This document shows positions 19,133 to 59,156 of a stretch of 64,000 nucleotides of DNA, piece after piece. The notes beneath the pieces are model-generated. The model had not been told where the DNA came from. It saw only the letters and a program-made list of their open reading frames with translations, and did no database searches. The position numbers were made by a program, and so were the translations under genes. How positions within the stretch are numbered: the first letter of the stretch is position 1; every line of letters starts with the position of its first letter. The stretch spans positions 124,001-188,000 of the IMG/VR virus record IMGVR_UViG_3300044712_001937; one strand, 5' to 3'.

Positions 19133-19160
19133 AAACTATTAACAAATAAAACCAAAAATT

Positions 19161-19358
19161 ATGCTTTATTGTAATTATTCTAATGAAATATCACGTGCTC
19201 GTAGGTTGATTAACATTTCAATCGATAGATTGATGTTTATAAAAAACAGATTTAGTGGTAATAACCAAAATCACAAGGATATTTTAGTTAAAACAGATAA
19301 ATTATTAGTTGAATATCAGGAATTGGATAAGGAGGTGAAAAAGCATGAATATCATTAG
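19161..19358 (+). CDS. Hypothetical protein
   Basis: ORF. Confidence 0.5.
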   Translation: MLYCNYSNEISRARRLINISIDRLMFIKNRFSGNNQNHKDILVKTDKLLVEYQELDKEVKKHEYH

Positions 19359-19623: not shown

Positions 19624-19633
19624 TAGCTTATTT

Positions 19634-19707
19634 GCTCCTGTAGTTCAATGGATAGAATGCTTGGTTTCGACCCAAATGATGCGAGTTCAAGTCTTGTCGG
19701 GAGTACT
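19634..19707 (+). tRNA. tRNA-Arg(TCG)
   Basis: ttgg-tttcgac-ccaa. Confidence 0.85.
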
Positions 19708-19721
19708 AAAAAAAAAGAATT

Positions 19722-19880
19722 ATGGCAACAAAAATAAGAGAAACTCCAATTTTATATGGAAAAGATGCTAAAAGATTTCTTGAAGCAATTGCTAATCCTA
19801 AAAAAATTTCAAAAGAAGAATTGGAGAGAATTAAAAAAAATTACGAAGAAATAAAAGGTATATCTAAAGGTATATTTTAA
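19722..19880 (+). CDS. Small protein resembling antitoxins of GNAT-toxin pairs
   Basis: MATKIRETPILYGKDAKRFLEAIANPKK (52 aa; not in ORF track). Confidence 0.55.
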   Translation: MATKIRETPILYGKDAKRFLEAIANPKKISKEELERIKKNYEEIKGISKGIF

Positions 19881-19883
19881 TAT

Positions 19884-19962
19884 GCATCTGTAGCTCAATT
19901 GGATTAGAGCACCTGTCTACGAAACAGGAGGTTTAAGGGTTCGAATCCCTTCAGATGTACTA
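19884..19962 (+). tRNA. tRNA-Arg(ACG)
   Basis: cctgt-ctacgaa-acagg. Confidence 0.92.
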
Positions 19963-20030
19963 ATTTTAATTAAAATATGAAGAGAACTAATACATCGTAA
20001 ATCAGGTTTCTTACAACTGATTTATGAATT

Positions 20031-20228
20031 ATGGAAAATTCCAATTTAAGTAAGAACCCGACCAAATATTGGTTGGTTGAACTCACGCTTACGAGTGGTG
20101 AAGTTCTCGAATTTTATGTTAAAGCTAAAACACAATTTGATGCTTATGAAAAAGCTGAAGAATATATGTTTTGGCTCGATAACAAAAAATTAAAAAATAA
20201 ATTAAAAGAGTTTAGGCTTATGCCTTAA
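20031..20228 (+). CDS. Hypothetical protein
   Basis: ORF. Confidence 0.55.
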   Translation: MENSNLSKNPTKYWLVELTLTSGEVLEFYVKAKTQFDAYEKAEEYMFWLDNKKLKNKLKEFRLMP

Positions 20229-20269
20229 AAAATGAGTTTTGATGGTATCTCGCCATGAAAAACCATTAC

Positions 20270-20326
20270 ATACGGGATGTAGATATTGGTGAACTGAAAC
20301 ATCTAAGTAATCAACGAGTCCCGTAT
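20270..20326 (+). ncRNA. Hairpin presenting a 23S rRNA helix-11 sequence
   Basis: GAACTGAAACATCTAAGTA (20291-20309) inside atacgggat/gtcccgtat stem. Confidence 0.65.
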
Positions 20327-20330
20327 TAAT

Positions 20331-20404
20331 GTGGGTAACGCATAAATGGTGGTGCACCAGCTTGCCATGCTGGAATAGAGTCGGTTCAATTCCGATTACC
20401 CACT
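20331..20404 (+). tRNA. tRNA-Gly(GCC)
   Basis: ccagc-ttgccat-gctgg; U73. Confidence 0.85.
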
Positions 20405-20462
20405 CTACATTTCGAAAATATTTTTTAGCTTTTTATAGTATTTATATGAAAAATATAATACT

Positions 20463-24035: not shown

Positions 24036-24111
24036 GGCTCTATAGCTCAATTGGTCAGAGTGACAGTCTCTAAAACTGGAGGTTATGGGTTCGAACCCCA
24101 TTAGAGCCACA
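24036..24111 (+). tRNA. Amber suppressor tRNA (anticodon CTA)
   Basis: ggctcta/tagagcc; cagt-ct-cta-aa-actg; canonical D and T arms; A73. Confidence 0.9.
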
Positions 24112-39331: not shown

Positions 39332-39724
39332 ATGAATAATTTAAAAGAATCTTCAACATATTTAATTAGATTTGGTAGTAGTGATACTATTCACTCGATA
39401 ACCATATTAATTGCAACTGAAAAAGCATATTTCATAAGATGGAATCGTGGTATTGAATCTCAAGATACATGGGAATTAAAATCAATATTGGAGAAAAATT
39501 ATTTAATGGTTGAAGATATTACAGAAAAAATGAATTGTGATTATGCTAAAATACCTAAAAATTTAAATTTACTTAAACCAACATTTCAAACTTCAAAAGA
39601 AATTTGTCCTATTTGTCATGGTATGGGAACTGTTCCAGATACAAGTAGTACAGCAGGTAGAATTTCTTGTCCTTTATGTCAAGGAAATAAACTTATAACA
39701 ACTAAAATAGAAGGATTAGTTTAA
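39332..39724 (+). CDS. Protein with DnaJ-type Zn finger
   Basis: CPICHGMG...CPLCQG. Confidence 0.7.
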   Translation: MNNLKESSTYLIRFGSSDTIHSITILIATEKAYFIRWNRGIESQDTWELKSILEKNYLMVEDITEKMNCDYAKIPKNLNLLKPTFQTSKEICPICHGMGTVPDTSSTAGRISCPLCQGNKLITTKIEGLV

Positions 39725-40183
39725 TTCATTAAACTCTGGAATCCAACGTTTTGGCATTCTTTTAAATGATAACTCAATTTCTCTTTTTCCATCATTTCTA
39801 TTGTATTTTACAAATCTATATTTCCAAGATTTGTATAATTTAGATGGTTCAAATATTGTTACTTCTTTCCAAAATTTCCAATGTCCCCTTGGTTTACCAT
39901 TATGCCACATTGAAACATAATAAAAATAATGAGTGTAATTTTCTTTGAGATATTTCTCAACTTCCCTACGATATCCTTTAATTATGAAGTTTCCTTTATA
40001 TTTTGAATATATAAAAAATAAACAATATGAACCTTCATACCAGTCAGGTTTACCATCAGGCATAACTTCAATAACAGGATAAAGTTTATTCACTTTATAT
40101 CCTAATTCTTTAGCTTTATCTATAGTATCATTCATAAAATGAAAACTTTTACCTGAACCTGCTGGATAATCTTTCATATTCAT
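39716..40183 (-). CDS. Hypothetical protein
   Basis: ORF. Confidence 0.65.
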   Translation of the reverse strand: MNMKDYPAGSGKSFHFMNDTIDKAKELGYKVNKLYPVIEVMPDGKPDWYEGSYCLFFIYSKYKGNFIIKGYRREVEKYLKENYTHYFYYVSMWHNGKPRGHWKFWKEVTIFEPSKLYKSWKYRFVKYNRNDGKREIELSFKRMPKRWIPEFNELN

Positions 40184-40202
40184 AATTAATAATTTTTAAA
40201 AA

Positions 40203-40400
40203 GTTTAGGGAGATATTGAAGTATATCGGTAGGTTATGCTTTCGTATTTTCACCAGACCTCAATATCTCCGGGCATTGTTAAGCTTATTATAGTTCACCA
40301 CTCATCTGCCGAAGCAGAACCTAAACTAATTGTTATGTGCCATAACTGCGTGTTACCTCTACAGCAAAGTCGGATATTTCTATCCAAAGAACTACGACAC
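40203..40400 (-). ncRNA. Structured RNA downstream of tRNA-like units
   Basis: gtttagg/cctaaac outer stem, 11-bp ggagatattga stem, cUUCGg tetraloop on minus strand. Confidence 0.55.
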
Positions 40401-40403
40401 ATT

Positions 40404-40477
40404 TGTAGCGATGGCAGGACTCGAACCTACGACTTCCCCTTTCACAGAGGCGAGCTAACCAACTGCCCTACATCGCA
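40404..40477 (-). ncRNA. tRNA-like RNA with 6-nt anticodon loop
   Basis: D arm and GGTTCGAGTCC T-arm intact; cctct-gtgaaa-agggg. Confidence 0.7.
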
Positions 40478-40564
40478 AAGCTTCTGAAATCTATTACATA
40501 TGTTATCTGCAGATTCATATGCTTTTAATATAACCGAAACTAAAATCAACCTTCCGATTGATAA

Positions 40565-40637
40565 TGATGACGTGACTGGACTCGAACCTGCGACTCCCCC
40601 GATAACGGGTTACTCTAACCACCTGAGTTACACGCCA
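40565..40637 (-). ncRNA. tRNA-like RNA with 4-nt anticodon loop
   Basis: tggcgtg/cacgtca; cccg-ttat-cggg. Confidence 0.7.
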
Positions 40638-40720
40638 AACGATAAGTATATTACGTAATTCTACTTTACCGTATTGTTCACCTTACTCCATATGACTTTC
40701 AGACAAACAACTTCTTTAAT

Positions 40721-40939
40721 TGTAGGGATAGAAGGATTCGAACCTAAGACCTCCGTATTTCTATTGAATATTACCCTTTAAATCAATATTTCTAACTTCT
40801 CTTTAGCAGCTTGCAAGTCCACTTTCAGTCCCTTGTTATAATACTTGAAATATTAAATAATACCCTCACCATAAAAATCATAAACCACGTGTATTTCACT
40901 TTCTTTATGGACGGTACTCTACCACTGAGCTATATCCCC
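40721..40939 (-). ncRNA. tRNA-like RNA with about 154-nt insert replacing the anticodon loop
   Basis: ggggata-tagctcagtggtagagt-accgt[insert]acgg-aggtc-ttaggttcgaatcc-tatccct-aca. Confidence 0.7.
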
Positions 40940-41007
40940 GTAAAAAATAAAAGAACTTTAAATTAGTTTACAATATTACGATTAATTTTTTAAATTGTTA
41001 CTAAATT

Positions 41008-41433
41008 TTAAAATATTTTATCACTAATTGTATGAATGGCTGAACCAGCCTCTAATCCTATTGAAAATATTATCACTAAATTCCAATTAATATGTTGAAA
41101 AATATTAGTACCACAACTGAAATATAGTATTAAGAATGGTATTAATCCAACATAAATGACTCTGATAATAGTACCTATTATTAATCCATGTGAAAATATA
41201 CTTCGATGATAAAACATTTCTTGATATGGAATCCAAATCATTTTTAATAACCACCATCGATTATATGGAGCACTATTAGTATCCAAATCGCCATTAAACA
41301 TAAAAGACGCAAATAAATATGCAAATAAAATAATTCCGGTAATCTTATAATCATTGGTAAAATGATATGTACCATATGCAATAACTGGTGTAACAACCAA
41401 AGTTATAATATCATGAGTTTTTCCATTTGGCAT
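41008..41433 (-). CDS. DUF2227-like metal-binding membrane protein
   Basis: MPNGKTHD...DLD...W.PY...HRS.FSHG..IGT..R...H...D. Confidence 0.8.
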   Translation of the reverse strand: MPNGKTHDIITLVVTPVIAYGTYHFTNDYKITGIILFAYLFASFMFNGDLDTNSAPYNRWWLLKMIWIPYQEMFYHRSIFSHGLIIGTIIRVIYVGLIPFLILYFSCGTNIFQHINWNLVIIFSIGLEAGSAIHTISDKIF

Positions 41434-41511: not shown

Positions 41512-44500
41512 ATGTATTTTATGAATATTTTTAATATTATTAAAGAAGAAATTCAAAACGTTGATGAAACATACCAAAGTGTTAGTGAAATAAAACAATT
41601 AGCATCAGATATTTTGATGAAAACTGCTGAAAAAAATGTTGAGAATTTTAATAATAAACATGTTTTTGATTATTTATATGGTATACATTTAAGTGAAATA
41701 GATACTTATAAATATACTGATTTGGTTGATTTTATAAAAAATATAAATATACAAATTTACTATGTACCTAAAGAAAATAACGGTATATATGGAAATTATT
41801 CAGTTTATAATATTAAATCAAAAAAAGAATTTAATCCTAATGCATCAAGAGAAATTAATGCGTTTTATGATTATCAAGATTTGAAAAATGATATTGATAG
41901 TTACATTAAACAAAATAATGGTATTGATGATAAAATACTATATATTAAAATATTTTATAAATTCTACAATACATTAATACATGAGTTACAACATGCTTAT
42001 GATGATTATCGCAGTAAAACTATGGCTTTTAATACTAAACAAAATAAAAGTTATAGAAATAAATATGATACTGCAGTAAATACGAATCAAAATCAAAATG
42101 AATTGCAATATGATTTAGAGAAAAATAAAGCATATCTTAATTTACCACATGAAATTTGGGCAAGATTTACTCAAGCAGTAACAAAAACATATTTCAGTAC
42201 TGTTGATTTTAAAAGTGATAATACAATTACCAATTTAATGTATCCTATTGACAAAGTTGTTGATAATTTTAAAAGAAATTTTCAAGGATATCATCTCCTA
42301 TCTGATAATATGAAAAAAAAATTACTTAATAAAGTAGTCCAATTTTGGCATTATGAACAGGATAAAATAAATAAAAGAAATAGTGATAAAAATAGTAATG
42401 AAATTAATAGTGATAAACCAATTAGTGAAGCTGCTAAAAATATATCTGATACTGAAATTATAATAGATAAAGGAACTGAATTATTTCATGGAACTATTGA
42501 AGAATTTGAAAAGGAAAAAACAACAGTTGGTGGCTATGATAATATATTTTGGACTACATTAGATTCTTCAATTGCTCAAACATATATTCCACAGTCAAGT
42601 AATATATATACTAATAGTAGTCATTATGCAATGCCAAGTGACGACCCTATGGTTGTTAAAACTCAATTAATAATGGGAATTAATTATGATTATTCAAAAG
42701 CTGAATTTAAAAATCATAGAGCAATTTCATATTTTGAAGCACCTATTTTTCAAGAATATTCAGATAATTATGAAAAAGCAAATAATTTAGCGTATCAGAA
42801 ATATCTCGAAATTGAAAATTTTATAAAAGAAGTTAAAATTAAAGAAACTAATGATACTGTAACCGATGAGGATTATGATAAATGGGGAGTATTACAAGAT
42901 GAATATGATTATTTACTTAAACAATCCAGAGAGCTTAATGTCAGTAAATTTAAAAATGATTTTGTTAACCAAAAGTTTATGGAAATGGGTTATAAACCAA
43001 CTGGAACTGAACACGCTCCAGATAATAATTATAGCTGGAAATTAAAATATGATAATGGTCAAGTACAACCTGCAAATTATAAAGCAAAAGGTAGATTGTT
43101 AATAGTAATTCCACAAAGAGATTTAAAAATATTAGACACTACTGATAGAGGTAATCGTGAAGGTGATTTAACTGATTTGGATTATCATAAACATAATTGG
43201 TTTCAAAGTGCTGAACAACATGGCTATGATGGAATTAAAATTAATGATTTTGCACAAAGTTCAGACCAAGGAAATCTTGGACATACTTCTATCGGTTTAT
43301 TTAAAAATACTTTAAAAGATGTTAAAATTGAAGAAATTGACGCAACTCATAATGATTTAGAACCTCATTTTCAAAGTAGTAATTGGCAATCACCTGAATA
43401 TAAAAAATATAAAGGAATTAATGAAATAATTGATGAAGAATTAGAAAAAATTATTCATATTTACGAAAATCCAGATATTGTTAAAAGTGAAGAAAATAAT
43501 ATTAATATTCATTATAATGACCGTAATGCCTATCCTTTTACAACATTTAAAGATTTTGGTAATAGAGTCTTCATAGGAAAAGAAGGTGGTACACATACTA
43601 CAATTGTTTATTATTATAAAGATGAATTACCTTCTGATGTTATGGATAGAATGAGACTTCATATTGAATATGATGGTAGAATTTTTCTTAATGAAAAAAT
43701 AATTTCATTTTGGCATTATCCTGATGAAGATAATTTTAAAGAAATAATTATAAATCTTGAAAAAGCTTTCTTAAATGATAGACATATGAATGTTAATATT
43801 TGGAATGACCCGAATTATAAAATTGAAGTTAAAAATTCAGATTTAAGTTATAATATTATTCCAATTCAACAATATATTAAATCTGAAAATCCAAGTGAAC
43901 TTGATTATAAACAACATATTATGTCTCCATTACTTAAACAAAAAAAATCAGTTCCTCTTGGCTATGGTTCAAAAAACCCTAAAAATACACCTGAATATAG
44001 AAATATGAGAAGAATAGAATTTCAAAGTGATGAAAGTATTAAACATTTAAATAAAATAATTTCTGAAATGGCTAATATATTAAATGAAGGTATCCCTGTA
44101 TTTCACGGTTCAGATAGAAAATTCTCAACTTTCGATATGTCAAAAATTGGAAGTGGTGATGGAAAAAATTTAGGTGGCTGGGGAATTTATTTTTCAGATA
44201 GCGAAGATGTTAGTAGTCGATATGTAACTTCAAATGGTTTCTTAGGTGAATATGAACTACGCAATGGAAACTATTTCGACTTAGACTCAGCATTAGAAGA
44301 TGGTGAACGTATAATTAGAAGACTTCAACAATTAGGAATAGATGAAAATCAAATTGAAGAATTTCAAAATGACTATGTGGAACAAGCTGAAAATTATGGT
44401 AATATTGATAATAAGCAAGCATATGATTGGCTTTCATATGTATTAGGTGGAGAAAAAGAAGCTTCAATGTTCCTTAAATCTATGGGATATATCGGAAATA

Positions 44501-44574
44501 CGTTTACAGATAAATGGAATAGAGATGCAAGAAATTATGTTGTGTTTGATACAAGTTCAATAATTTATACCTAA
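41512..44574 (+). CDS. Polyvalent protein: zincin HExxH plus two ADP-ribosyltransferase-like domains
   Basis: LIHELQHAYDD...EIWAR; LFHGT...IFWT...AQTY; VFHGS..F..F....IGSGDG...GWGIYFSD...NYVVFD. Confidence 0.7.
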   Translation: MYFMNIFNIIKEEIQNVDETYQSVSEIKQLASDILMKTAEKNVENFNNKHVFDYLYGIHLSEIDTYKYTDLVDFIKNINIQIYYVPKENNGIYGNYSVYNIKSKKEFNPNASREINAFYDYQDLKNDIDSYIKQNNGIDDKILYIKIFYKFYNTLIHELQHAYDDYRSKTMAFNTKQNKSYRNKYDTAVNTNQNQNELQYDLEKNKAYLNLPHEIWARFTQAVTKTYFSTVDFKSDNTITNLMYPIDKVVDNFKRNFQGYHLLSDNMKKKLLNKVVQFWHYEQDKINKRNSDKNSNEINSDKPISEAAKNISDTEIIIDKGTELFHGTIEEFEKEKTTVGGYDNIFWTTLDSSIAQTYIPQSSNIYTNSSHYAMPSDDPMVVKTQLIMGINYDYSKAEFKNHRAISYFEAPIFQEYSDNYEKANNLAYQKYLEIENFIKEVKIKETNDTVTDEDYDKWGVLQDEYDYLLKQSRELNVSKFKNDFVNQKFMEMGYKPTGTEHAPDNNYSWKLKYDNGQVQPANYKAKGRLLIVIPQRDLKILDTTDRGNREGDLTDLDYHKHNWFQSAEQHGYDGIKINDFAQSSDQGNLGHTSIGLFKNTLKDVKIEEIDATHNDLEPHFQSSNWQSPEYKKYKGINEIIDEELEKIIHIYENPDIVKSEENNINIHYNDRNAYPFTTFKDFGNRVFIGKEGGTHTTIVYYYKDELPSDVMDRMRLHIEYDGRIFLNEKIISFWHYPDEDNFKEIIINLEKAFLNDRHMNVNIWNDPNYKIEVKNSDLSYNIIPIQQYIKSENPSELDYKQHIMSPLLKQKKSVPLGYGSKNPKNTPEYRNMRRIEFQSDESIKHLNKIISEMANILNEGIPVFHGSDRKFSTFDMSKIGSGDGKNLGGWGIYFSDSEDVSSRYVTSNGFLGEYELRNGNYFDLDSALEDGERIIRRLQQLGIDENQIEEFQNDYVEQAENYGNIDNKQAYDWLSYVLGGEKEASMFLKSMGYIGNTFTDKWNRDARNYVVFDTSSIIYT

Positions 44575-50269: not shown

Positions 50270-50938
50270 ATGAAAACTTCTGTTAAATACAACAAATCAA
50301 ACGTATTAAAAAATGCTTGGTCTATACTTCGCAAGTCTAACAACCTAAAGAGCTGGTCAGACTGCATGAAAGATGCATGGAATATAGAAAAGAATGGTTT
50401 TTCTGATATTTCAATCAGTACCATATATAATAAGTATTTTAAACAGATATTTAACTATGTTTTAAATAAGATACATAAATACGAAATTGCGCAGGAAATA
50501 ACTCAGGATATTTTTCTTAAAGTAAATGAACATATCAATAATTATGATGTTGACAGAGCAAGTTTAAAGACTTGGATTTATAAAATTGCAAACAATAAAG
50601 TTATTGATTATTGGAGAAGTTTAGAAAACAGAACCAAAGATTTAAAAACGCAAATATCAGATTTTCAGGATGAGAACGGCAAAGAATATTTTCAAATTGC
50701 TGATAATTCAGATATTGAAACCTATACCAATGGAATAGAGATAAATGAGGCTGTAAGTTTGGCATTATCAAACCTTAAACCTGAATATCGTAAAATTGCG
50801 GAATTATGTTTTATTGAGGGTTTAAAATATAACGAAATATCTGAAAAGTTGAATATCCCAATGGGTACGGTAAAAGGCAATATTAACCGTATTAGGGCAA
50901 TGTTACAAGAAAGTTTACAATCAGTATATCAAAATTAA
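50270..50938 (+). CDS. ECF-family RNA polymerase sigma factor with short N-terminal extra domain
   Basis: AQEITQDIFLK, KTWIYKIANNKVIDYWR (region 2); LKYNEISEKLNIPMGTVK..INR.R (region 4). Confidence 0.92.
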   Translation: MKTSVKYNKSNVLKNAWSILRKSNNLKSWSDCMKDAWNIEKNGFSDISISTIYNKYFKQIFNYVLNKIHKYEIAQEITQDIFLKVNEHINNYDVDRASLKTWIYKIANNKVIDYWRSLENRTKDLKTQISDFQDENGKEYFQIADNSDIETYTNGIEINEAVSLALSNLKPEYRKIAELCFIEGLKYNEISEKLNIPMGTVKGNINRIRAMLQESLQSVYQN

Positions 50939-51273: not shown

Positions 51274-51378
51274 AACCTATAAAATAAATCATATATTAAT
51301 TTATAATATATGGTTTATTTTGTAACAATTTTAATTAAAAAACGTATACTAATATACAAACCATAACAAACAAGACAA

Positions 51379-51645
51379 ATGAAAAATTCAGTAGTTGTAA
51401 ATTGCTCAAATGGTATAGTACGCCCATTACATGAAATAGCAAGTGAAATCCGTAAAGATTGGAAAAACGTTTATTTCGGTGCAGTTCCATACTTAGATGC
51501 AATGCGAAGTTTGGATAAGATAACCGATAACTACGGCATGGATAGTGCAAAGGATATTGTACTGTATTTTCTTTCCAATGCTTCAACTTGGAGAGGTGAC
51601 AATGCCAAACGTATTAAAGCAGAATTAAAGACAATGACAAAATAA
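51379..51645 (+). CDS. Conserved phage hypothetical protein
   Basis: RPLHEIASEIRKDW..VYFGAVPYLDAM...YFLSNA.TWRG..A..IKAEL. Confidence 0.8.
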   Translation: MKNSVVVNCSNGIVRPLHEIASEIRKDWKNVYFGAVPYLDAMRSLDKITDNYGMDSAKDIVLYFLSNASTWRGDNAKRIKAELKTMTK

Positions 51646-51814
51646 AGAAGTGTTTATTTAATGTAAAGTAAAAAGAGGTTGCAGGGATGCACCCTCTTTT
51701 TTTGTTTATACAATGTTCATATACATACATTTTTTAATTAAAAAGTTTAAATGTTTGTAACAATCTTAATTAAAAACCGTATACTAATGTACAAACCAAA
51801 TAAATATTAAGACA

Positions 51815-52375
51815 ATGACAAATTTAATTATCTCTATTACAAGCATTGAAGAAAAAAATTCAATTGAACAAGCTGGTTGTATTCTTTACAATGAAAAAAA
51901 AGGTACTTATTTACTACCTACCGATGCAATAGGTATTGATTTAAAAGGTTATTCAATTATTAATCGAAGTAGTTTATCTATTGAAGTTAAACAACCTGAA
52001 AAAAATAATGCCGAAAAGAGAAAAGAAAAGGAAATCAGAGTATATCAAAAACTTATTTCTCAGGGTTACACAAAGAAAGATTTAAGTAAATGGAATTTTT
52101 TTGATGTTAATCTGAAAGTTGTTTCTATTGAAGAAATTTCTTCAAATAAGATTGAGGAATGTTTAATTGCAACAAGCCACAAAGATTTAAAGAATGTTAT
52201 AATTAAACACATCTCAACCCGTAGCAACAGTAAAACCTTAAAATCTGCCTTAAAAATAGGTCAAACTGTTACCGCCAAAGTGTTAAGTTTAGAAGAACCA
52301 GAAACAAAGGTTGCAATAGGGATTAAACTATATAAACCTGAATATATTGCAAGTAAATACTTGCGGTTAAAATAA
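51815..52375 (+). CDS. Hypothetical protein
   Basis: ORF in promoter cassette. Confidence 0.7.
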   Translation: MTNLIISITSIEEKNSIEQAGCILYNEKKGTYLLPTDAIGIDLKGYSIINRSSLSIEVKQPEKNNAEKRKEKEIRVYQKLISQGYTKKDLSKWNFFDVNLKVVSIEEISSNKIEECLIATSHKDLKNVIIKHISTRSNSKTLKSALKIGQTVTAKVLSLEEPETKVAIGIKLYKPEYIASKYLRLK

Positions 52376-52490
52376 TAAAATTAGGTAAATTAAAACCCGT
52401 ATAGTAATGTACGGGTTTTTTTGTTTATATATGTAACAATCTTAATTAAAAACCGTAAACTAATGTACAAACCAAATAAATATTAAGACA

Positions 52491-52685
52491 ATGAGTAACG
52501 AAAACAAAACATATATAGGAACTTACAAAGTTGTGAAGTTCTTTAAGGTTTCAGGTAGAAGACAAATATTAAGACGTGGGTTAAGTTTGGAAGAGGCAAA
52601 GAGAGTAGTTAATACTTATCCAGATTCTAATCGTAGTCTGGTAGGTTTTACTAAACAATTCAGTGCCAATAAGTATTTTGTATAA
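52491..52685 (+). CDS. Small phage protein
   Basis: YKVVKFF...RGLSLEEAK. Confidence 0.7.
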   Translation: MSNENKTYIGTYKVVKFFKVSGRRQILRRGLSLEEAKRVVNTYPDSNRSLVGFTKQFSANKYFV

Positions 52686-52767
52686 TGTACTTTTTTAATT
52701 AAAAACCTGTAACATCTTACAGGTTTTTTCGTATATAGATATATATATAACCATAACAATTACGACA

Positions 52768-53211
52768 ATGATTGAAAAGATTAAGAACATATTGGACGAA
52801 GTTTTACCCGCTAATGCTTTTAGATATGTAGGTTTAAGTTCAGGTAGTTTTGGCGGTGACTATATTAAAATCGGTATTGCTGCAAGTGATTTAAATATTC
52901 ACCAAGTAGCAGGACAAAAACCGCAATTAGTTTCTTTAATGTTGCATTTGGACGATATGGAATTGCATCCCCAATGTTTTGGCGGTAATGGTGGGCAAAG
53001 CATATACAGAATGCCAAATTTGGAGCTAAGAGAAGAAAAGTATTTAGCCATGAAGAACGTAAAAATACCATTCAGGCAACCAAAGAGAGAAGAAAAATTT
53101 ATCTTAGCTACAATACGCAAATTTGCCGAAAATTGGCTGCAAGCATTAAAAGATAATAAAGAGGTTTTAATGTATCAAGACTTGGTAAACTACGATGCAA
53201 TATTAAGCTAA
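52768..53211 (+). CDS. Hypothetical protein
   Basis: ORF in promoter cassette. Confidence 0.7.
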   Translation: MIEKIKNILDEVLPANAFRYVGLSSGSFGGDYIKIGIAASDLNIHQVAGQKPQLVSLMLHLDDMELHPQCFGGNGGQSIYRMPNLELREEKYLAMKNVKIPFRQPKREEKFILATIRKFAENWLQALKDNKEVLMYQDLVNYDAILS

Positions 53212-53294
53212 GACTAACCAACAATTTTAATTAAAAACCGTGTAACATTTGCACGGTTTTTTCGTATATAGATATAACCAATAGTATTAAGACA

Positions 53295-53561
53295 ATGAGA
53301 ACAATTGACAAAATAATAACCAAAGTGAATGGTAGATATGGTGCTCCAATGGGCAGGTCTAATGTTATCCCAGAACCAAGTGAGACTATAAATGGGAAAC
53401 CACATTATAAAATTGTTGGTAAGGTTTTTGATTGTAAAGTACCAATGTGCAATGATGGTGCTTATGACAAAGGAGGTGCTTATTGGGGTATAGGTTCAAC
53501 TTTAAGAGTTAAGTATAATAAAGATTTAACATATATTGAGTTTTATAGAAGTGATTATTAA
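53295..53561 (+). CDS. Conserved phage hypothetical protein
   Basis: RYGAPMGR...GAYDKGGAYWG. Confidence 0.75.
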   Translation: MRTIDKIITKVNGRYGAPMGRSNVIPEPSETINGKPHYKIVGKVFDCKVPMCNDGAYDKGGAYWGIGSTLRVKYNKDLTYIEFYRSDY

Positions 53562-53578
53562 CCAATAACATTAAGACA

Positions 53579-54099
53579 ATGAAACCAATATTAATAAAGT
53601 ACAATATTTCTGAAAATAGAGCGCAAGAAATTGCGGACGAATTAAGTGAGATTAAAGATTTTTCAATTCTTTCATCTATAACAACCATTAAGGATAATGT
53701 ACAAAAACATTTGGGGTTAATAGCTAAGAATGAAATTGATTTTATTAATGAAGTTTGCGAAGTAGCATATAATTGCAAAGGTTTATACTTGTAACAAACT
53801 TTAATTAATAACTGTAACAATTGTACTAACTTTTCGTATACTAATGTACAAACCAAATAAATATTACGACAATGGCAGAGTATAAAGTAAGTCTGGAAAT
53901 TCAGCTCGATGCTAAAAATCCATTAGAAGCTGCAAAAACTTTTGAATCTTGGATTAAAGAAGTAGGTGAACATTTTCAATACCATGTACAAGAAGAAAAT
54001 ACTCCTGAAATCTTTTCAGTTGACTTGAATGAAGAAGATGAGGATGCAGTATTACCAGTAAAACCGGAGGATTATAATCCTATCATTTGTAAAATCTAA
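53579..54099 (+). CDS. Two small hypothetical genes (53579-53794, 53872-54099)
   Basis: ORFs with shared 5' UTR ending GACAATG. Confidence 0.65.
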
Positions 54100-54431
54100 T
54101 GTACAATTTTTAATTAAAAAAATGTAACATCTTTCAGGTTTTTTTCTATACTAATGTACAAACCAATAAATAATAACAATTTAAATTTAATGCCATGAGT
54201 AAAACATTTAAAGACGTTAAGAAGTATTATAACGGTAAAGAAAGTATTAACAATCGCAAACAGCAAAGAACTCTAAAACAAATGAGTCAATACGCTGGTA
54301 TTGGGATTGAAAGAGAGTAAAACAAATAAACAAAATTAAGGGAGATTATCTCCCTTTTTTTTATTTAAAATAGGTAACAATTTTAATTAAAAAACGTATA
54401 CCTATATACAAACCAAATAAATATTACGACA

Positions 54432-54719
54432 ATGGAAGCAATTGATAATTATGTAAAGGAAATACAAGAAGCACAAATTAAAGATTGGAATAGGCATGGT
54501 TTTACATTACCTCATCCAATTATATCAATGACTAAAGGTCAAAAGTTTTATAAAATATACATCACTACATTTGGAAGTAAAGCAATTCATTGCTTTGTCG
54601 ATTTTGATGGTAATATCTTTAAAGCTGCCAGTTTAAATGCACCAGCTAAAGGTATAAGAGGGAATATCAATAATGAGAAGAAACCTTTATTATGTGGTGA
54701 TTTTTATAGATACAGGTAA
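54432..54719 (+). CDS. Conserved phage hypothetical protein
   Basis: HCFVD..GNIFKAAS.NAPAKGIRGNI. Confidence 0.75.
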   Translation: MEAIDNYVKEIQEAQIKDWNRHGFTLPHPIISMTKGQKFYKIYITTFGSKAIHCFVDFDGNIFKAASLNAPAKGIRGNINNEKKPLLCGDFYRYR

Positions 54720-54768
54720 CAATTTTAATTAAAATACGTATATCAATATACAATCAATAATTAAGACA

Positions 54769-54984
54769 ATGAATGAAGTAAGAGCAAAAATAGTGGTGAT
54801 GTCGCATTTATCCGATGCAGGTTTTGAAGTAAATGTAAATCCAATACAGGCACAAAAACGAATTGAATTTGCAAAGTTTATTATCTTAAAAGTAAAAGGA
54901 GATTTAAACCTAATGATTGACCCAACTAAATTATGGGATGAGTTTATGGGTATATCAATACTAAAGTCAGGAAAGGGAGAATAA
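54769..54984 (+). CDS. Hypothetical protein
   Basis: VMSHLSDA motif. Confidence 0.65.
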   Translation: MNEVRAKIVVMSHLSDAGFEVNVNPIQAQKRIEFAKFIILKVKGDLNLMIDPTKLWDEFMGISILKSGKGE

Positions 54985-55042
54985 TTCTCCCTTTTTTAAT
55001 TAAAAAATGTAACAATAATAAAACATTTACGTATAATATAGT

Positions 55043-55082
55043 AGGCAGGGTGAAACTTGGGTGCGGTAATCCGACCCTGCCT
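55043..55082 (+). ncRNA. Small hairpin RNA, copy 1
   Basis: aggcagggt-gaaacttgggtgcggtaatccg-accctgcct directly after ECF promoter. Confidence 0.55.
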
Positions 55083-55211
55083 TTATGTTTGCTTATTTAG
55101 ATTTAGTTTAAATAAAGTTTGTGATAATTTTAATTAAAAAAGTTTATATTTGTATAACAATTTTAATTAAAAAACGTATTACTATATATAAACCAAATAA
55201 AATAAAATATT

Positions 55212-56108
55212 ATGGCAAGGATTAAAAAAGTTAAAATCGGAACAGAAGCACTCACATTAAGTGAATTACTGTTTAAGGTTGAAATGAGGGATAATCCACG
55301 TAGAACAAACAGCGAATATTCAAAAGTCGTTGTAGGTACTATTTTTCAGGATGATTTTAGAGGTGAATTAGAAGTTGATTTAAACTACTGTTCACCACGT
55401 TATGAACTTGTTCCTAACAGTGAAATATTTCCAGAAATCAAACGTGTATTAAACGAAAATGAGGTTGAATATACAGTAACATATTCGCACCTTAATTTTG
55501 CCCGTTTTTACGTTGACTACGTAATAACTGACGCTCGATATGCTTACAGGATTAAAAGCAGTAAAGGCGATATTATTCAACCTATGCTTAGAGTTCAGCA
55601 CTCTTACAATGGTTTAACTAAGTATAAAATCACTTTCGGATATTTCCGTTTGGTTTGTACCAATGGCTTATCTATTCCAGTTCAAGAAATGAACGAATTC
55701 AATTTATGTATCGTTGGTAAACATACTGATTCGATTAAACACTCATTCAAAAAATTGGATGTTATGTTGAAGTTGTTTGTTAACGATGCAAAGCAAATTA
55801 CTGAAAGTATTACAGCTAAATATGAATTACTTGGCGGTCGCATGATTACTAATGTAGAAGACCGTATAACTGAGGTTTTAGAAGCCTCTGGTATCATTGC
55901 AGTTGAAACCAAAGGGTTTAACAGCGTTGAGGATATTAAAACCCGTATAAATAAAGAAACATATTTGTACAATGGGCAAGTAAATGAATGGCTCATTTAT
56001 AATGGAATTAACTCATATATTAATGATGATTCCAGAAATATTGCAGCACCAGAGAAAAGGCAGGAAACTGATAGCAAGGTACTTGAATACATGCTCACTA
56101 CATGTTAA
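55212..56108 (+). CDS. DUF932-family protein
   Basis: YELVPN...HSYNG....ITFG.FRLVCTNGL. Confidence 0.8.
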   Translation: MARIKKVKIGTEALTLSELLFKVEMRDNPRRTNSEYSKVVVGTIFQDDFRGELEVDLNYCSPRYELVPNSEIFPEIKRVLNENEVEYTVTYSHLNFARFYVDYVITDARYAYRIKSSKGDIIQPMLRVQHSYNGLTKYKITFGYFRLVCTNGLSIPVQEMNEFNLCIVGKHTDSIKHSFKKLDVMLKLFVNDAKQITESITAKYELLGGRMITNVEDRITEVLEASGIIAVETKGFNSVEDIKTRINKETYLYNGQVNEWLIYNGINSYINDDSRNIAAPEKRQETDSKVLEYMLTTC

Positions 56109-56397
56109 ATAAAAGGGGTTAATCCCCATTTATTTTTAATATTAATTTGTATATTTGTACAAATTTCAAATTTCTATAAAGAGTGTGCTATCAGTTTAAC
56201 CAGAACTGGCACACTTTTTTTATTTAAAATAGTTTGTACAATCTATAACATTTTTAATTAAAAACCGTAAACTAATGTACTAAATTTACATTCGTCACTT
56301 AAAAAACCTGTTATGTCAAAAATGTAACAGGTTTTTTATTTTTACTTGCATTTGATTGTACATAATGTATTTTTGCTGTACTTATGTATAACCTAAA

Positions 56398-58567
56398 ATG
56401 AAGTACACAAATTATTTAATGAAATGTGACTATGTTAATTGTGAGAAAATTATTAACGATAGTCCTGAATATATGAAACCTATTACTGTTCCAATGTCCA
56501 TTATCGGTGCTGTTGGCGGTTTATGTATCATTGGTGGAATGTTCCCAATGACTTATATTATTGATACATTTCGCAATGTACGCTATCAATATTTAAGATA
56601 TTATAGAAAATCTCACCCATTTAAACAAATTAATTTGAATTGATTTTAATTAAAAACTGTAACATTAACAGTTTTATTTCGTATTATATTGTACAACCAA
56701 ATAAATAATACAACAATGAGAGCAGATATTTTAATCGAAAAATTTGAAAGACAAACAGCAGATTTATTAAATAAACAAACTGTTGAGATATTCAAAGAAC
56801 TGGTTTTATTATTTGGAGAAATGAAACAAGTTCAACCAAATTTAAAACGTTTATATATTGGTATGGGAACATACGCAATTGATGGTGATTATATTGTCGA
56901 ATATAATGATTTCGAAGACGAAAGTAATACCGATGAGATTATTGGTAAAATTGATGAAGAACTTGTAAGATACAAAGGTTTAGCCAAAAATAGCGATTTT
57001 TCTGAACAAATTAATGATTGTATTAATAATGATAATAATGCTATTTTTAACGCTTCAAACCATATGAATGAGGCATGTATTGAATTCGTTAAACTTTGTA
57101 ATTATATTCAAGAAATTAAAATGACTACATTATTTTCTGGTGTTAACGAAAATGGTGTGATTGTTGATTATGGTGCTGGTTCGCATTTAGATACTTATAT
57201 TGATGCTGTTGAAAGTTCAGAGGTTGAACTACTTGTTAAGAATAAAATTCCAATAATATTTCATCAAACACATTCAGAAGAGTATTATAAATATACTCAC
57301 CTAAAAGACTGATTTTAATTAAAAACCTTGCAACAATTGTGAGGTTTTTTCGTATATAAATGTACAACCAATAATTAAGACAATGACAAAGAAAGCATTT
57401 ATCGAATTAGCAAGCTATCACCAATACGGTAAACGTAATGAACGTGGTTTTATAGCTTTGTTCTTTGATTGGATGAGAGGTGATGATGGCGTTGGTTATA
57501 AATATTGTGTTTATGCCAGAGCTTTAAACTCAACAAAGAAAGAACTTATTGATGCATTATATAATGCAATTACCAAAGATGAGGATACTCCTTGGTATGT
57601 TCAAACAATTATTGCACAGGAAAATAAACAAAGATTTAAAGTTCCTATTGTTGCGAGTGGTTTATTTAATCTAATTAAACATAACTAATAGATTTAAACC
57701 TGCTTAGGCAGGTTTTTCTTTTTATAAAAAGAATGATATTTCTTATGTAATATTTTTATACGTTAGTCAACAATAAAAAACATTTATTAATTTCTTATGT
57801 ATATTTGTGGTATGTATATTAAACCTCATTAGTCTCATGGATAAATTATATGTTATAAATAAGAAACATTTAGATGATTTTAAAGGTTATACCGGAGAAT
57901 TAGTTATCATTGTTCATATACATAGTTTAGGGCATTGTACTATTGAAAGTACTTTAACAGGTCGATTATGGTATGCTGATATTGAGAATGATTTAGTTGA
58001 GGCTATTGAAGCTCAAAATAAAGAAGAAATATTTGAAGAAGTTTTGCAACAATTATTTTAATATATCGTATTATAATGTACAAAGATGTTAAACTAATAC
58101 ATATATAAAATGTGTAAAAATAATAAAGTTCAGCACAGATGGGAATCAATGAAAACTGAAAACCCAGCATTGTACAAGTTACTCAAAAGTAAAGTAAATA
58201 AGAAATAAGGTTGTCTATATTGTTATTTGGTTGTAGTCCTCCTGCTTGTCACAGGAGGATTTTTTTGTTTATATCTGTAACATTTTTAATTAAAATTCGT
58301 ATTACTATATACAAACCAATAATAAAGACAATGATTATTAAACCTGAAATTAAATATAAAGAATTTACTGTTTATCCTGATAACTATTTTGGATATTCCC
58401 TTTATGATAGAAATGGTAAATGGTGTCAATCTGCTACTAATATTGAATCATTAAAAGGTTCAGTAGAATGCATACTTTTAGCTGATATTGAATTAACACC
58501 TAATGAATATTGGAAAAGAAAAAATGCAATATTGAAAAAATATAACTTAATTTCTTGTAACAATTAA
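56398..58567 (+). CDS. Several hypothetical genes (56398-56643, 56716-57312, 57383-57688, 57837-58061, 58330-58567)
   Basis: ORFs, most behind ECF-type promoters. Confidence 0.6.
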
Positions 58568-58762
58568 AAACAAATTTCGTATATTTACATATCAGAAGCG
58601 ATTAAGAATCTGCTTCAAAACAAAGTAACTGGATTATAAACTTAAAATGCCAGAATTATGAAAAATGCCGTAAATTTAGCAGCTCCCACGAGGGGTACTC
58701 CCAAGTAGAAAAACTATATAATAATAATTAAATTCCGAATAAATAATAATTAGAAAGAAAAT

Positions 58763-59054
58763 AACTGTTCAGGATAAACCAAAAATAACTAAAAGATATG
58801 AAATCCTTGCAAGGTTAGTCTTTTTGGTTTTGACTACACAATCCGCACGCTTGGCTGTCTATATATTAAATGACTGCCTGTGCACCATATGAATGCCCGC
58901 CTTACGCTTATCCCTCCCGCATCCCTAACGGCTTGCAGGTGGCAACAGCGAGGCTGCAAAACTTGTCCGGATACATACACGGTGCGATAATATACCGCAA
59001 ACGATGGAGTAATCATTCCGGATGCCCGTAAATCAGTCAAATTCCTGAACAGTT
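58763..59054 (+). ncRNA. About 290-nt GC-rich structured RNA candidate
   Basis: 12-bp closing stem aactgttcagga/tcctgaacagtt with nested stems; promoter at 58556; terminator 59057-59091. Confidence 0.65.
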
Positions 59055-59156
59055 TTAGTCCCCTGACCATCGTGTGTGAGGGGATTTTTTTGTTTATATC
59101 TGTAACATTTTTAATTAAAATTCGTATACTAATATACAACCAATAAAAATAAGACA

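What the first reader, a model, noticed from the sequence alone, without database searches (positions are those of the whole stretch)
40203..41002. Separate operon of three anticodon-less tRNA mimics plus a structured RNA
Seen on the minus strand behind an ECF-type promoter and a gttcttt motif: three units with good acceptor, D and T arms but anticodon loops of about 154, 4 and 6 nt, separated by roughly 85-nt spacers, then a UUCG-containing multibranch RNA. All three keep the elbow and lose decoding, which looks selected rather than decayed. Inference: decoys for tRNA-binding defence nucleases or toxins, Y-RNA-like scaffolds, or RNase P/Z processing tags that release the spacers as small RNAs.
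Basis: partly seen in the sequence, partly recalled or inferred. Interest (0 to 1): 0.72.

Follow-up and report, generated by a model that had tools for sequence, protein, structure and literature searches.

The report
Phage operon of anticodon-less tRNA-shaped RNAs
A giant uncultured phage carries an ~800-base non-coding RNA operon of tRNA-shaped RNAs that cannot decode, ending in a new conserved four-way-junction RNA that always sits just before one unknown phage gene. Nothing like it is in the RNA family library.

Summary
Window 40203-41002 (minus strand) is ORF-free. It starts with a phage-wide ECF-type promoter (GTAAC-N16-CGTA).

It holds seven structured modules:
- U1: a tRNA frame split by a ~147-nt insert. 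This is the weakest unit.
- S1: a hairpin with a palindromic loop.
- U2: Rfam tRNA 34 bits, with a 4-nt anticodon loop.
- S2.
- U3: Rfam tRNA 45 bits, with an anticodon arm 2 nt short.
- TR: a 124-nt four-way-junction RNA.

In relatives, the tRNA-like units keep acceptor, D and T stems through compensatory changes. They also keep the GG/UUC elbow and an N73-C74 trailer. Their anticodon loops range from 3 to 7 nt.

TR is a new covarying RNA family. It lies directly upstream of a P0002-family gene in 31 of 32 loci, even in distant relatives that have no tRNA-like units.

My best reading (confidence ~0.4) is that the tRNA-shaped modules are processing and stability handles for RNase P, RNase Z and the CCA-adding enzyme. 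On this reading they were inserted into the structured 5' leader of the P0002 mRNA. A trans-acting decoy role is not excluded. A Y-RNA/Ro60 role is not supported: the genome has no TROVE or RtcB gene. No RNA-seq run was listed.

The parts
40976..41001 (-). ECF-sigma-type promoter: GTAAC (41001-40997), 16-nt spacer, CGTAA (40980-40976)
   Evidence: this motif occurs 48 times in the genome against ~4.9 in shuffles, almost always 30-45 nt upstream of an ATG. The same promoter heads the island in relatives; the genome has two sigma70_r2 ORFs.
40948..40956 (-). GTTCTTTTA, a variant of the recurrent GTTCTTTGA leader motif (boxA-like by my own knowledge)
   Evidence: the motif heads the phage's real tRNA arrays; 27 copies in 41 kb of island strand against 16 in 469 kb elsewhere in related loci. 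NusB/NusE binding was not tested.
40723..40939 (-). U1: tRNA-shaped frame (acceptor GGGGAUA/UAUCCCU, canonical D arm, weak T stem) split by a ~147-nt insert (40903-40757) at the anticodon-loop position
   Evidence: ARAGORN -i; Rfam 15 bits, 3' half only; fold z = -0.7; no homologue of the insert in the fetched loci.
40638..40722 (-). S1: 85-nt structured spacer. Its second hairpin carries the palindrome AAUUACGUAAU (40660-40650) in a 13-nt loop
   Evidence: Hairpins with palindromic UACGUA or UUCGAA loops recur in islands of L001, L015, L022, L029, L031, L033, L036, L038 and L046.
40567..40637 (-). U2: 71-nt tRNA-shaped RNA with a 4-nt anticodon loop UUAU, G3.U70 and U73
   Evidence: 34.1 bits; cloverleaf MFE, z = -2.7.
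40478..40566 (-). S2: 89-nt structured spacer, conserved upstream of family-A units in L038 and L046
   Evidence: (z = -1.9).
40406..40477 (-). U3: 72-nt tRNA-shaped RNA. Its anticodon arm is 2 nt short (loop GUGAA). It has a U1.U72 mismatch and A73
   Evidence: (44.8 bits). The closest relative, L001:3564-3637, shows compensatory acceptor changes.
40335..40402 (-). U4: conserved three-way junction (closing stem AUGUGUC/GGCACAU), not tRNA-like in its T loop
   Evidence: z = -2.2; 88-89% identical over 66 nt to modules in L022 and L035, and 80% to one in L046, with a covarying inner hairpin.
40203..40326 (-). TR: four-way-junction RNA. P0 is GUUUAGG/CCUAAAC and P1 is a UUCG hairpin. Module R1 follows. 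A long P3 stem encloses module R2. R1 and R2 share a ~20-nt loop motif containing GC(U/A)UAAC
   Evidence: (96.9% paired, 16 of 32 pairs compensatory, 0 of 500 shuffles as high). No Rfam match.
40198..40202 (-). U-run directly after the contiguous 3' strands of P3 and P0; possible attenuator or A/U-rich translation start region
   Evidence: The simple terminator scan does not call it. A function here is inferred.
39716..40183 (-). P0002-family gene (155 aa), always downstream of TR; function and fold unknown
41008..41433 (-). DUF2227 membrane-protein gene upstream; syntenic in some relatives only

Best explanation
The locus is one non-coding transcription unit driven by a phage-specific ECF-sigma-type promoter. 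It is an expanded 5' leader of the P0002-family gene.

The ancestral, minimal unit is promoter, then TR (a four-way-junction leader RNA with two conserved loops and a U-run), then the P0002 gene. In this phage clade, extra structured modules have been inserted between promoter and TR.

The tRNA-shaped modules (U1-U3) keep only what tRNA-end enzymes read: a 7-bp acceptor stem, the T arm, the D/T-loop elbow and the N73-C74 trailer. They have lost the 7-nt anticodon loop, so they cannot decode.

They most likely act as built-in handles. RNase P would cut at their 5' end. RNase Z or an exonuclease, followed by the phage CCA-adding enzyme, would finish their 3' end. This would cut the primary transcript into stable small RNAs: the tRNA-shaped RNAs, S1, S2 and U4, plus cargo carried inside a tRNA frame as in U1. 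It would also free the TR-P0002 mRNA with a defined 5' end.

Shown: the structures, their conservation and covariation, the loss of decoding loops, the TR-gene linkage and the promoter class.
Inferred: transcription, cleavage by RNase P and RNase Z, and any regulatory action of TR.
For: 1. U2 and U3 pass the Rfam tRNA threshold but have 4-nt and 5-nt loops.
2. Across 11 family-A units, acceptor, D and T stems are 94.9% paired, with 13 of 16 pairs compensatory. The elbow nucleotides are invariant. The anticodon arm varies in length, and only 1 of 11 has a canonical loop.
3. Every tRNA-like unit I read carries C74 after the discriminator, as do all 49 genuine tRNAs of the genome. This suggests the same maturation route. 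The genome has a CCA-adding-enzyme-like ORF.
4. In about 10 loci a tRNA-like unit ends 0-10 nt before P0 of TR.
5. The spacers are conserved structured RNAs, not filler.
6. Relatives carry tRNA frames with ~85-100-nt inserts after a non-decoding hairpin (family C). This is the same chassis idea as U1.
7. Distant P0002 loci have promoter, TR and gene with no tRNA-like units. TR is therefore the leader and the tRNA-likes are insertions.
8. A second site in the genome has the same layout: promoter, then a 58-nt tRNA-like with no anticodon arm, then an ORF.
Against: - No transcript or processing data: no RNA run was listed, and the DNA contigs add nothing.
- RNase P and Z need only the acceptor-T minihelix, so the retained D arm and anticodon stem may point to another reader of the tRNA shape.
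- A 1:72 mismatch in 7 of 11 units is not required for processing. It recalls initiator-type tRNAs.
- The 58-nt unit with its own promoter suggests the tRNA-shaped RNAs may be wanted for their own sake.
- U1 is poorly supported.
- The tRNA-like units are absent from roughly half of the related islands.
Confidence: 0.4

Rival explanations
1. Trans-acting tRNA mimics. After release, the tRNA-shaped RNAs bind and block or divert a host factor that reads the tRNA body or acceptor end rather than the anticodon. Candidates are a tRNA-directed defence nuclease, or a nucleotidyl- or pyrophospho-transferase toxin. Alternatively they serve a phage RNA-repair enzyme.
For: Selection keeps exactly the elbow and acceptor. 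A 58-nt unit with no anticodon arm has its own promoter and lies ~2 kb from an RNA ligase gene. Further anticodon-defective units sit in the main tRNA array. Jumbo phages are known to carry tRNA-repair and counter-defence systems (PMC7824862).
Against: No partner protein was identified. The best-known defence nucleases cut the anticodon loop, which these RNAs lack. A few phage RNAs would have to compete with the whole cellular tRNA pool. Many relatives lack the units.
Confidence: 0.22
2. Parts of a higher-order RNA or RNP assembly. The modules stay joined, or associate through palindromic kissing loops, forming an ornate multimeric RNA like ROOL or GOLLD, possibly together with P0002.
For: Hairpins with 8-nt loops GUACGUAA or GUUCGAAA (two different palindromes), or larger loops with AAUUACGUAAU, recur in the islands. 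Phage ROOL and GOLLD RNAs lie near tRNA islands and multimerise by kissing loops (bioRxiv 10.1101/2024.12.08.627333). P0002 is rich in conserved aromatic and basic residues.
Against: No Rfam ROOL or GOLLD match. Module content is shuffled between relatives, which is unlike a single conserved large fold. Dimerisation was not tested.
Confidence: 0.1
3. Anticodon-independent amino-acid carriers. The units would be charged by a synthetase that ignores the anticodon (AlaRS, LeuRS or SerRS) and used outside the ribosome. The 1:72 mismatch would keep them away from EF-Tu.
For: U2 has G3.U70. 7 of 11 units have a 1:72 mismatch and 9 of 11 have A73. Family C and D have class-II-like D arms. The identity rules are from my own knowledge.
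Against: G3.U70 occurs only in U2, where it is paired with U73. No conserved identity set exists across the family. I saw no aminoacyl-transferase gene nearby, but I did not search the whole genome for one.
Confidence: 0.06
4. Decaying pseudo-tRNAs with no function, plus an ordinary terminator.
For: Phage tRNA arrays turn over quickly. U1 is degenerate. Genome 109113-109187 looks like a broken tRNA.
Against: Compensatory changes maintain three stems across phages whose P0002 proteins are only ~50-60% identical. The units have their own promoter. TR and U4 are strongly conserved.
Confidence: 0.05
5. U1 is a real tRNA interrupted by a self-splicing intron, and U3 is a working tRNA-His(GUG).
For: ARAGORN calls U3 as His-GUG and, with the intron option, calls U1.
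Against: No intron or ribozyme family matches at E<=10. 147 nt is shorter than known group I introns (my own knowledge). The spliced loop would lack U33. U3 needs a G.G mismatch or a short arm. The genome already has a normal tRNA-His(GUG) at 104495. The homologue of U3 in L001 has a different 'anticodon'.
Confidence: 0.04
6. Y-RNA-like scaffold for a Ro60/RtcB repair particle.
For: Bacterial Y RNAs carry a tRNA-like domain without an anticodon, and some jumbo phages encode Ro/TROVE proteins (PMC7824862).
Against: This complete genome has no TROVE and no RtcB gene; both searches found their controls. There is no Y RNA match.
Confidence: 0.02

Closest known systems
mascRNA / MALAT1 and MEN-beta tRNA-like 3'-end elements (my own knowledge)
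   Same: A tRNA-shaped module with a shrunken, non-decoding anticodon loop. It is embedded in a longer transcript and serves as an RNase P/RNase Z cleavage handle that separates two RNAs.
   Different: That system is eukaryotic and nuclear, with one unit per transcript. Here the system is a phage with several units in series, upstream of an mRNA leader. Cleavage is not shown.
Phage T4 tRNA-cluster stable RNAs (species 1 and 2, rnaC/rnaD) (my own knowledge)
   Same: Phage-encoded small stable RNAs of unknown function, co-transcribed with tRNA-shaped RNAs and released by tRNA-processing enzymes.
   Different: No sequence relation was tested or seen. T4's RNAs lie among decoding tRNAs. This operon is separate from the decoding arrays and is tied to one protein gene.
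Bacterial Y RNA (YrlA) with Ro60/Rsr
   Same: A tRNA-like elbow and acceptor mimic without an anticodon.
   Different: No TROVE/Ro60, no RtcB and no Y RNA model match. No Ro-binding helix was identified.
ROOL and GOLLD ornate phage RNAs (bioRxiv 10.1101/2024.12.08.627333)
   Same: Large structured non-coding RNAs of phages that lie near tRNA islands. They use kissing loops, and tRNAs can sit inside GOLLD linkers.
   Different: No Rfam match. Here the small modules are shuffled between relatives. Multimerisation is untested.
Engineered tRNA scaffold for recombinant RNA (Ponchon and Dardel; my own knowledge)
   Same: Cargo RNA inserted into a tRNA frame gains correct end-processing and stability. 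U1 and family C look like natural versions.
   Different: The natural inserts sit at the anticodon-loop position (U1) or after a retained anticodon-like hairpin (family C). Their function is unknown.
rrn boxA antitermination element (my own knowledge; the string GTTCTTTGAAAAC is a mollicute nested-PCR primer in PMC3019172, which I recall targets the 16S-23S spacer)
   Same: GTTCTTTGA stands at the head of untranslated RNA operons and between RNA modules, as boxA does in rRNA operons.
   Different: Binding of NusB/NusE is not tested, and the host is unknown.
Structured 5' leaders (riboswitches, protein-binding attenuators)
   Same: TR has covarying stems, invariant loop and junction nucleotides, a U-run, and a fixed position just upstream of one gene family.
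   Different: No ligand or binding protein is known. There is no match to any Rfam leader. The twin-loop four-way-junction architecture is not one I recognise.

Membership tests
tRNA (Rfam RF00005) | Cloverleaf scoring above the curated threshold (29 bits) | tested here: met
   U2 34.1 bits and U3 44.8 bits. U1 does not meet it (15.3 bits, 3' half only).
tRNA (functional, decoding) | 5-bp anticodon stem with a 7-nt loop, U33 and a purine at 37 | tested here: not met
   U2 has a 4-nt loop UUAU. U3 has a 5-nt loop, or a 7-nt loop only with a mismatched or short stem. U1 has a ~147-nt insert. Among 11 family members, only L022a has CUGAUAA.
tRNA-shaped RNA under selection | Compensatory changes in acceptor, D and T stems; conserved G18G19 and T-loop | tested here: met
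   94.9% paired, 13 of 16 pairs with double changes, 0 of 500 shuffles as high, slid controls 31-43%. One search gives the invariant columns.
Bacterial Y RNA / Ro60 RNP | Ro60 (TROVE) gene in the genome, often with RtcB | tested here: not met
   no match in the complete 364.7-kb genome; both searches found their controls.
Bacterial Y RNA / Ro60 RNP | Match to Rfam Y RNA models | tested here: not met
   One search lists nothing at E<=10.
Group I intron in a tRNA (for U1) | Match to the intron covariance model and a size of about 200 nt or more | tested here: not met
   no intron or ribozyme family at E<=10. The insert is 147 nt.
ROOL / GOLLD | Match to the Rfam models | tested here: not met
   (window and four related loci).
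T-box leader (for TR) | Match to Rfam T-box, with a specifier loop and antiterminator bulge | tested here: not met
   no match at E<=10. Only a loose resemblance of UGGU...ACCG.
RNase P/Z processing handle (mascRNA-like) | Cleavage at the 5' end and after the discriminator by RNase P and RNase Z | not testable with these tools
   Only indirect support: the N73-C74 trailer is shared with the real tRNAs, and units abut TR.
Intrinsic terminator (for the TR 3' end) | GC-rich hairpin immediately followed by a U-run | tested here: inconclusive
   The simple scan finds none. However, the 3' strands of P3 and P0 are contiguous and are followed by U5.
boxA (NusB/NusE site) | Consensus-like motif in the leader of untranslated operons that binds NusB/NusE | tested here: inconclusive
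   Position and ~19-fold enrichment fit. Binding is not testable, and the literature search gave no direct support.
ECF-sigma-type promoter | GTAAC-like -35 element, 16-17-nt spacer, CGT-containing -10 element, and recurrence upstream of genes | tested here: met
   (48 copies against ~5 expected). (two sigma70_r2 ORFs of 206 and 271 aa). Which sigma reads it is not tested.

The most novel reading that the evidence does not exclude
A clade of uncultured phages makes a set of purpose-built tRNA mimics: some lack a decoding loop, one lacks the whole anticodon arm, and some carry 90-150-nt cargo. It also makes palindromic kissing-loop hairpins. These RNAs would act in trans, either as RNA inhibitors or decoys of host systems that read the tRNA body or acceptor end, or as an RNA-protein particle with the P0002 protein. 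Their production would be coupled to P0002 through a new riboswitch-like four-way-junction leader. That would be an RNA-based counter-defence or takeover device of a kind not yet described.
Probability: 0.2. Interest if true: 0.85.

Novelty: new variant of a known kind. Interest (0 to 1): 0.66.

Why it matters
Phage tRNA genes are usually read as codon-usage helpers or as spares against anticodon nucleases. Here a phage lineage maintains tRNA shapes that cannot decode, which shows the shape itself is being used.

If the handles model is right, this is a bacterial-virus counterpart of the mascRNA and mitochondrial 'tRNA punctuation' logic, and a natural version of the engineered tRNA scaffold. 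If the mimic model is right, it is a new class of RNA-based counter-defence.

Two further results stand on their own:
- TR is a new, well-covarying RNA family: 29 distinct sequences were aligned, and model R1 found nine more.
- TR is strictly tied to a protein family with 368 cluster representatives and no known fold. That makes a testable RNA-protein or RNA-ligand pair.

Tried and rejected
- **Rfam.** The gathering scan of the window and the E-value scans of the region and of four related loci found only tRNA matches.
- **Phage databases.** DNA and protein searches of GenBank phages found nothing.
- **Synteny.** The relatives L003 and L004 share the DUF2227 gene, but the island is not next to it. 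G001 lacks both TR and P0002.
- **First DNA pattern.** It gave nine chance hits in high-GC contigs.
- **P0002 function.** No Pfam or PHROGs match. The AlphaFold model is confident (pLDDT 86.8). Foldseek against PDB and AFDB, and the wide VIA search (best Z 4.4), found no fold match. The ESM Atlas gave only hypothetical viral clusters and faint PD-(D/E)XK leads, which I do not trust.
- **Expression.** No RNA run was listed. The four DNA runs hold identical contigs, with no variant lacking the U1 insert.
- **Paralogy.** The units are not close copies of any decoding tRNA of the genome. U3 does share its T arm and its U1.U72/G2-C71/C3-G70 acceptor top with tRNA-Met at genome 10555.
- **boxA.** String searches returned mostly primers, including a mycoplasma PCR primer, and two NusB papers had no matching text.
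- **Genetic code.** Reading TAG as sense barely changes total ORF length, so I kept table 11 despite the tRNA(CUA).
- **Ideas dropped by eye.** A kissing interaction between the R1 and R2 loops through CUAUAG is not conserved. Pairing of the R loops with U4 or with the tRNA D arm is not consistent. The 'GTTCTTTGG' inside U4 is part of a hairpin that varies in relatives, not a boxA copy.
- **Host.** P0002 loci in 'bacterial' MAGs sit on contigs that look like mis-binned phage. One contig is 362,763 bp and labelled Paceibacterota. No host could be named.
Full report
**Setting.** The window is bases 124001-188000 of a complete 364,702-bp virus record with direct terminal repeats and about 26% G+C. 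By ARAGORN it carries 49 tRNA genes and a tmRNA. The decoding tRNAs of the window lie on the plus strand at 13-24 kb. The finding is a separate block on the minus strand. It sits between a DUF2227 membrane-protein gene (41008-41433) and a 155-aa gene of unknown function, P0002 (39716-40183). No minus-strand ORF of 40 aa or more lies in 40203-41002.

**Check of the observation.** Reading the minus strand gives the following layout.
- Promoter: GTAAC (41001-40997), a 16-nt spacer, CGTAA (40980-40976).
- Leader motif: GTTCTTTTA (40956-40948).
- U1: 40939-40723.
- S1: an 85-nt spacer (40722-40638).
- U2: 40637-40567.
- S2: an 89-nt spacer (40566-40478).
- U3: 40477-40406.
- U4: a further module (40402-40335).
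- TR: the terminal RNA (40326-40203), then UUUUU. The ATG of P0002 follows at 40183.

U2 and U3 pass the curated Rfam tRNA threshold, at 34.1 and 44.8 bits against 29. U2 folds as a cloverleaf with a 4-nt loop. U3's anticodon arm is two nucleotides short (alignment). It gives either a 5-bp stem with the loop GUGAA or ARAGORN's His-GUG reading, which needs a G.G mismatch.

U1 is weaker. Its acceptor stem (7 pairs) and D arm are canonical, but only 3 of 5 T-stem pairs form. Rfam matches only the 3' half, at 15 bits. ARAGORN calls it only with the intron option, placing a 147-nt insert. Its fold is no better than shuffles.

GTAAC-N15-17-CGTA occurs 48 times in the genome against about 5 in shuffles, nearly always 30-45 nt before an ATG. 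The phage encodes two sigma-70 region-2 proteins of 206 and 271 aa.

**Relatives.** I found homologues of P0002 and of the terminal RNA in four ways:
- protein search;
- contig look-ups;
- a DNA pattern taken from the terminal RNA;
- scans of viral and genome collections.

No GenBank phage holds either element. All relatives are metagenomic, so the clade is uncultured.

**The terminal RNA (TR).** I aligned 29 distinct sequences. RNAalifold predicts 32 pairs, 16 of which have compensatory changes. The structure has five parts:
- a 7-bp closing stem P0, with A-U in 19 and G-C in 10 sequences at one position;
- a variable hairpin P1 (the UUCG hairpin in the window);
- a short stem R1;
- a 13-bp stem P3, with double changes at 10 pairs;
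- inside P3, a second short stem R2.

R1 and R2 each close a loop of about 20 nt that carries the same motif, with GC(U/A)UAA(C/U) invariant or nearly so.

On this structure 96.9% of cells are paired. No shuffle out of 500 reaches the observed covariation, and slid partners give 35-55%. The window copy folds with z = -3.4. Nothing in Rfam 15 matches it.

The 3' strands of P3 and P0 are contiguous and are followed by a U-run. The gene start comes about 15 nt later.

**Linkage of TR to the P0002 gene.** Of 32 loci with at least 300 nt downstream of TR, 31 carry a P0002-family coding region on the same strand. The exception is a short contig whose twin has the gene. Going the other way, every P0002 locus found by protein search has TR upstream. 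A complete 340-kb relative lacks both.

A profile search finds 368 representatives of the protein family. Three distant members I sampled also have a TR-like RNA just upstream, at 70.9, 37.2 and 16.6 bits. In two of them TR follows directly behind a GTAAC-N16-CGTAT promoter, with no tRNA-like unit. The basic unit is therefore promoter, TR, gene. TR is best read as the structured 5' leader of the P0002 mRNA.

P0002 itself gives a confident model (pLDDT 86.8) but no fold or family match. Its conserved residues are mostly aromatic and basic.

**The tRNA-shaped modules.** In about half of the related loci the space between promoter and TR holds tRNA-like units. They fall into groups.
- Family A holds short units of 68-76 nt like U2 and U3.
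- Family B holds units of 83-102 nt.
- Family C holds tRNA frames with a class-II-like D arm, a non-decoding hairpin and an ~85-100-nt insert (157-171 nt in all).
- Family D is like family C but has no insert.

For 11 family-A units, acceptor, D and T stems are 94.9% paired. 13 of 16 pairs show changes on both sides, no shuffle is as high, and slid controls give 31-43%. The D-loop GG and the T-loop UUC are invariant.

The anticodon arm, by contrast, has 44% column identity against 74-82% elsewhere. Its stems are 4-6 bp and its loops 3, 4, 4, 5, 5, 5, 6, 6, 7, 7 and 7 nt. Only one unit (L022a, CUGAUAA) looks able to decode.

Position 1:72 is mismatched in 7 of 11 units. After the discriminator, every unit I read has C74. 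This is the same convention as all 49 decoding tRNAs of this genome, none of which encodes CCA. The genome has a CCA-adding-enzyme-like ORF.

In about ten loci a tRNA-like unit ends within a few bases of P0 of TR. Decay is therefore an unlikely explanation: the shape is kept and the decoding loop is not.

**The other modules.** The 'spacers' are not filler.
- U4 is 88-89% identical over 66 nt to modules in L022 and L035, and 80% identical to one in L046. Its inner hairpin covaries.
- S2 has homologues upstream of family-A units in L038 and L046.
- S1 ends in a hairpin whose loop holds the palindrome AAUUACGUAAU.

Related islands carry hairpins with 8-nt loops GUACGUAA or GUUCGAAA. These are two different palindromes in the same place, which hints at loop-loop self-pairing.

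The motif GTTCTTTGA heads the phage's decoding tRNA arrays. In related loci it is about 19-fold enriched on the island strand. From my own knowledge it resembles the boxA antitermination element of rRNA operons in Firmicutes and Mollicutes. The same string is a mycoplasma nested-PCR primer (PMC3019172), which I recall targets the 16S-23S spacer. I could not test binding.

**Elsewhere in the genome.** A covariance model of family A finds three more units that ARAGORN misses.
- The most telling is at genome 205649-205706. It is 58 nt long, with acceptor, D arm and T arm but only a 9-nt linker in place of the whole anticodon arm.
- That unit stands 12 nt behind its own GTAAC-N16-CGTAT promoter and about 30 nt before an ORF.
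- An RNA ligase gene lies ~2 kb downstream.
- Another unit, in the main array, has the loop GAGAUGG, which lacks U33.

**How it most likely works.** The parts that are conserved are the 12-bp acceptor-T helix, the elbow, and the N73-C74 trailer. By established knowledge of tRNA maturation, these are what RNase P, RNase Z and the CCA-adding enzyme read. The anticodon arm is dispensable for all three.

The units sit in the leader of an mRNA, next to conserved structured RNAs, and often directly against TR. I therefore favour the view that they are processing and stability handles, with confidence about 0.4. They would cut the long leader into stable small RNAs, carry cargo (U1, family C), and free the TR-P0002 mRNA. 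Transcription and cleavage are inferred. No RNA run was listed, and the four DNA runs only confirm the sequence.

The main rival is that the released tRNA mimics act in trans on a factor that reads the tRNA body (about 0.22). The promoter-driven 58-nt unit near an RNA ligase speaks for this. The two views are compatible. The other rivals are weaker:
- a multimeric RNA assembly;
- anticodon-independent charging (only U2 has G3.U70);
- an intron-containing tRNA;
- plain decay.

The Y-RNA idea fails its membership test, since the complete genome has neither TROVE nor RtcB.

**Novelty.** Non-decoding tRNA-like processing elements and phage tRNA-cluster stable RNAs are known kinds. ROOL and GOLLD show that phages place ornate RNAs near tRNA islands. 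Five things are new here:
- a conserved, covarying family of anticodon-defective tRNA shapes in a phage clade;
- tRNA frames carrying large inserts;
- a unit that lacks the anticodon arm;
- the placement of these units inside an mRNA leader;
- the TR RNA family, with its strict tie to an unknown protein family.

I rate it a new variant of a known kind, with interest 0.66.

Noticed in passing
genome 205649-205706 (outside the window; L061:850-907): A 58-nt tRNA-like RNA with acceptor, D and T arms but no anticodon arm (9-nt linker). It stands behind its own GTAAC-N16-CGTAT promoter and before a 97-aa ORF. A weak KH-like ORF and an RNA ligase (PF09414) lie downstream.
   Followed up: partly
genome 106487-106561 and 109113-109187 (outside the window): Two more tRNA-like units inside the main tRNA arrays that ARAGORN does not call. 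One has the loop GAGAUGG (no U33). The other has an acceptor that does not pair.
   Followed up: partly
whole genome; window 13439-20405: Many decoding tRNAs come in pairs, one of 72-77 nt and one of 84-89 nt (Gln, Glu, Val, Trp, Lys, Cys, Asn, Ile). These are extra-long versions of tRNAs that are short in cells.
   Followed up: no
window 24036-24110 (+): The best-scoring tRNA of the window (70.1 bits) has anticodon CUA (amber suppressor type; ARAGORN labels it Pyl). Reading TAG as sense barely lengthens ORFs genome-wide, so I saw no general recoding.
   Followed up: partly
window 55009-55095 (+): A GTAAC-N16-CGTAT promoter is followed not by a gene but by a ~45-nt hairpin (9-bp stem AGGCAGGGU/ACCCUGCCU) and a U-rich tail. 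This is a candidate small RNA with no Rfam match.
   Followed up: partly
whole genome (48 sites; e.g. window 41001, 44580, 51322-59111): GTAAC-N16-CGTA(T) is a phage-wide promoter class of ECF-sigma type. Two sigma70_r2 ORFs lie at genome 174423-174623 (window 50423-50623) and 313531-313728.
   Followed up: partly
genome 103377, 106327, 108120, 137415, 145362, 218902: GTTCTTTGA stands at the head of tRNA arrays, sometimes 600-700 nt before the first called tRNA. Further uncalled RNAs may lie in those stretches.
   Followed up: no
window 41512-44574 (+): A 1020-aa ORF diverges from the island. Its C-terminal region carries an ADP-ribosyltransferase domain of the kind found in polyvalent proteins (PF18760, E 8e-10).
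   Followed up: no
genome 111992-112351 and 342623-343009: The phage encodes its own tmRNA and a 749-aa ORF with a CCA-adding/poly(A) polymerase domain.
   Followed up: no
L057 (JBAZIW010000001.1, 362,763 bp), L058-L060: Contigs that carry TR and P0002 are filed in public MAGs as Paceibacterota, Patescibacteria, Saccharibacteria and Ignavibacteriales. The 363-kb one is probably a jumbo phage binned as a bacterium.
   Followed up: no
L015:5593-5681: A relative's contig carries an IMPDH gene interrupted by an intein (Hom_end_hint and Intein_splicing hits) near the island.
   Followed up: no
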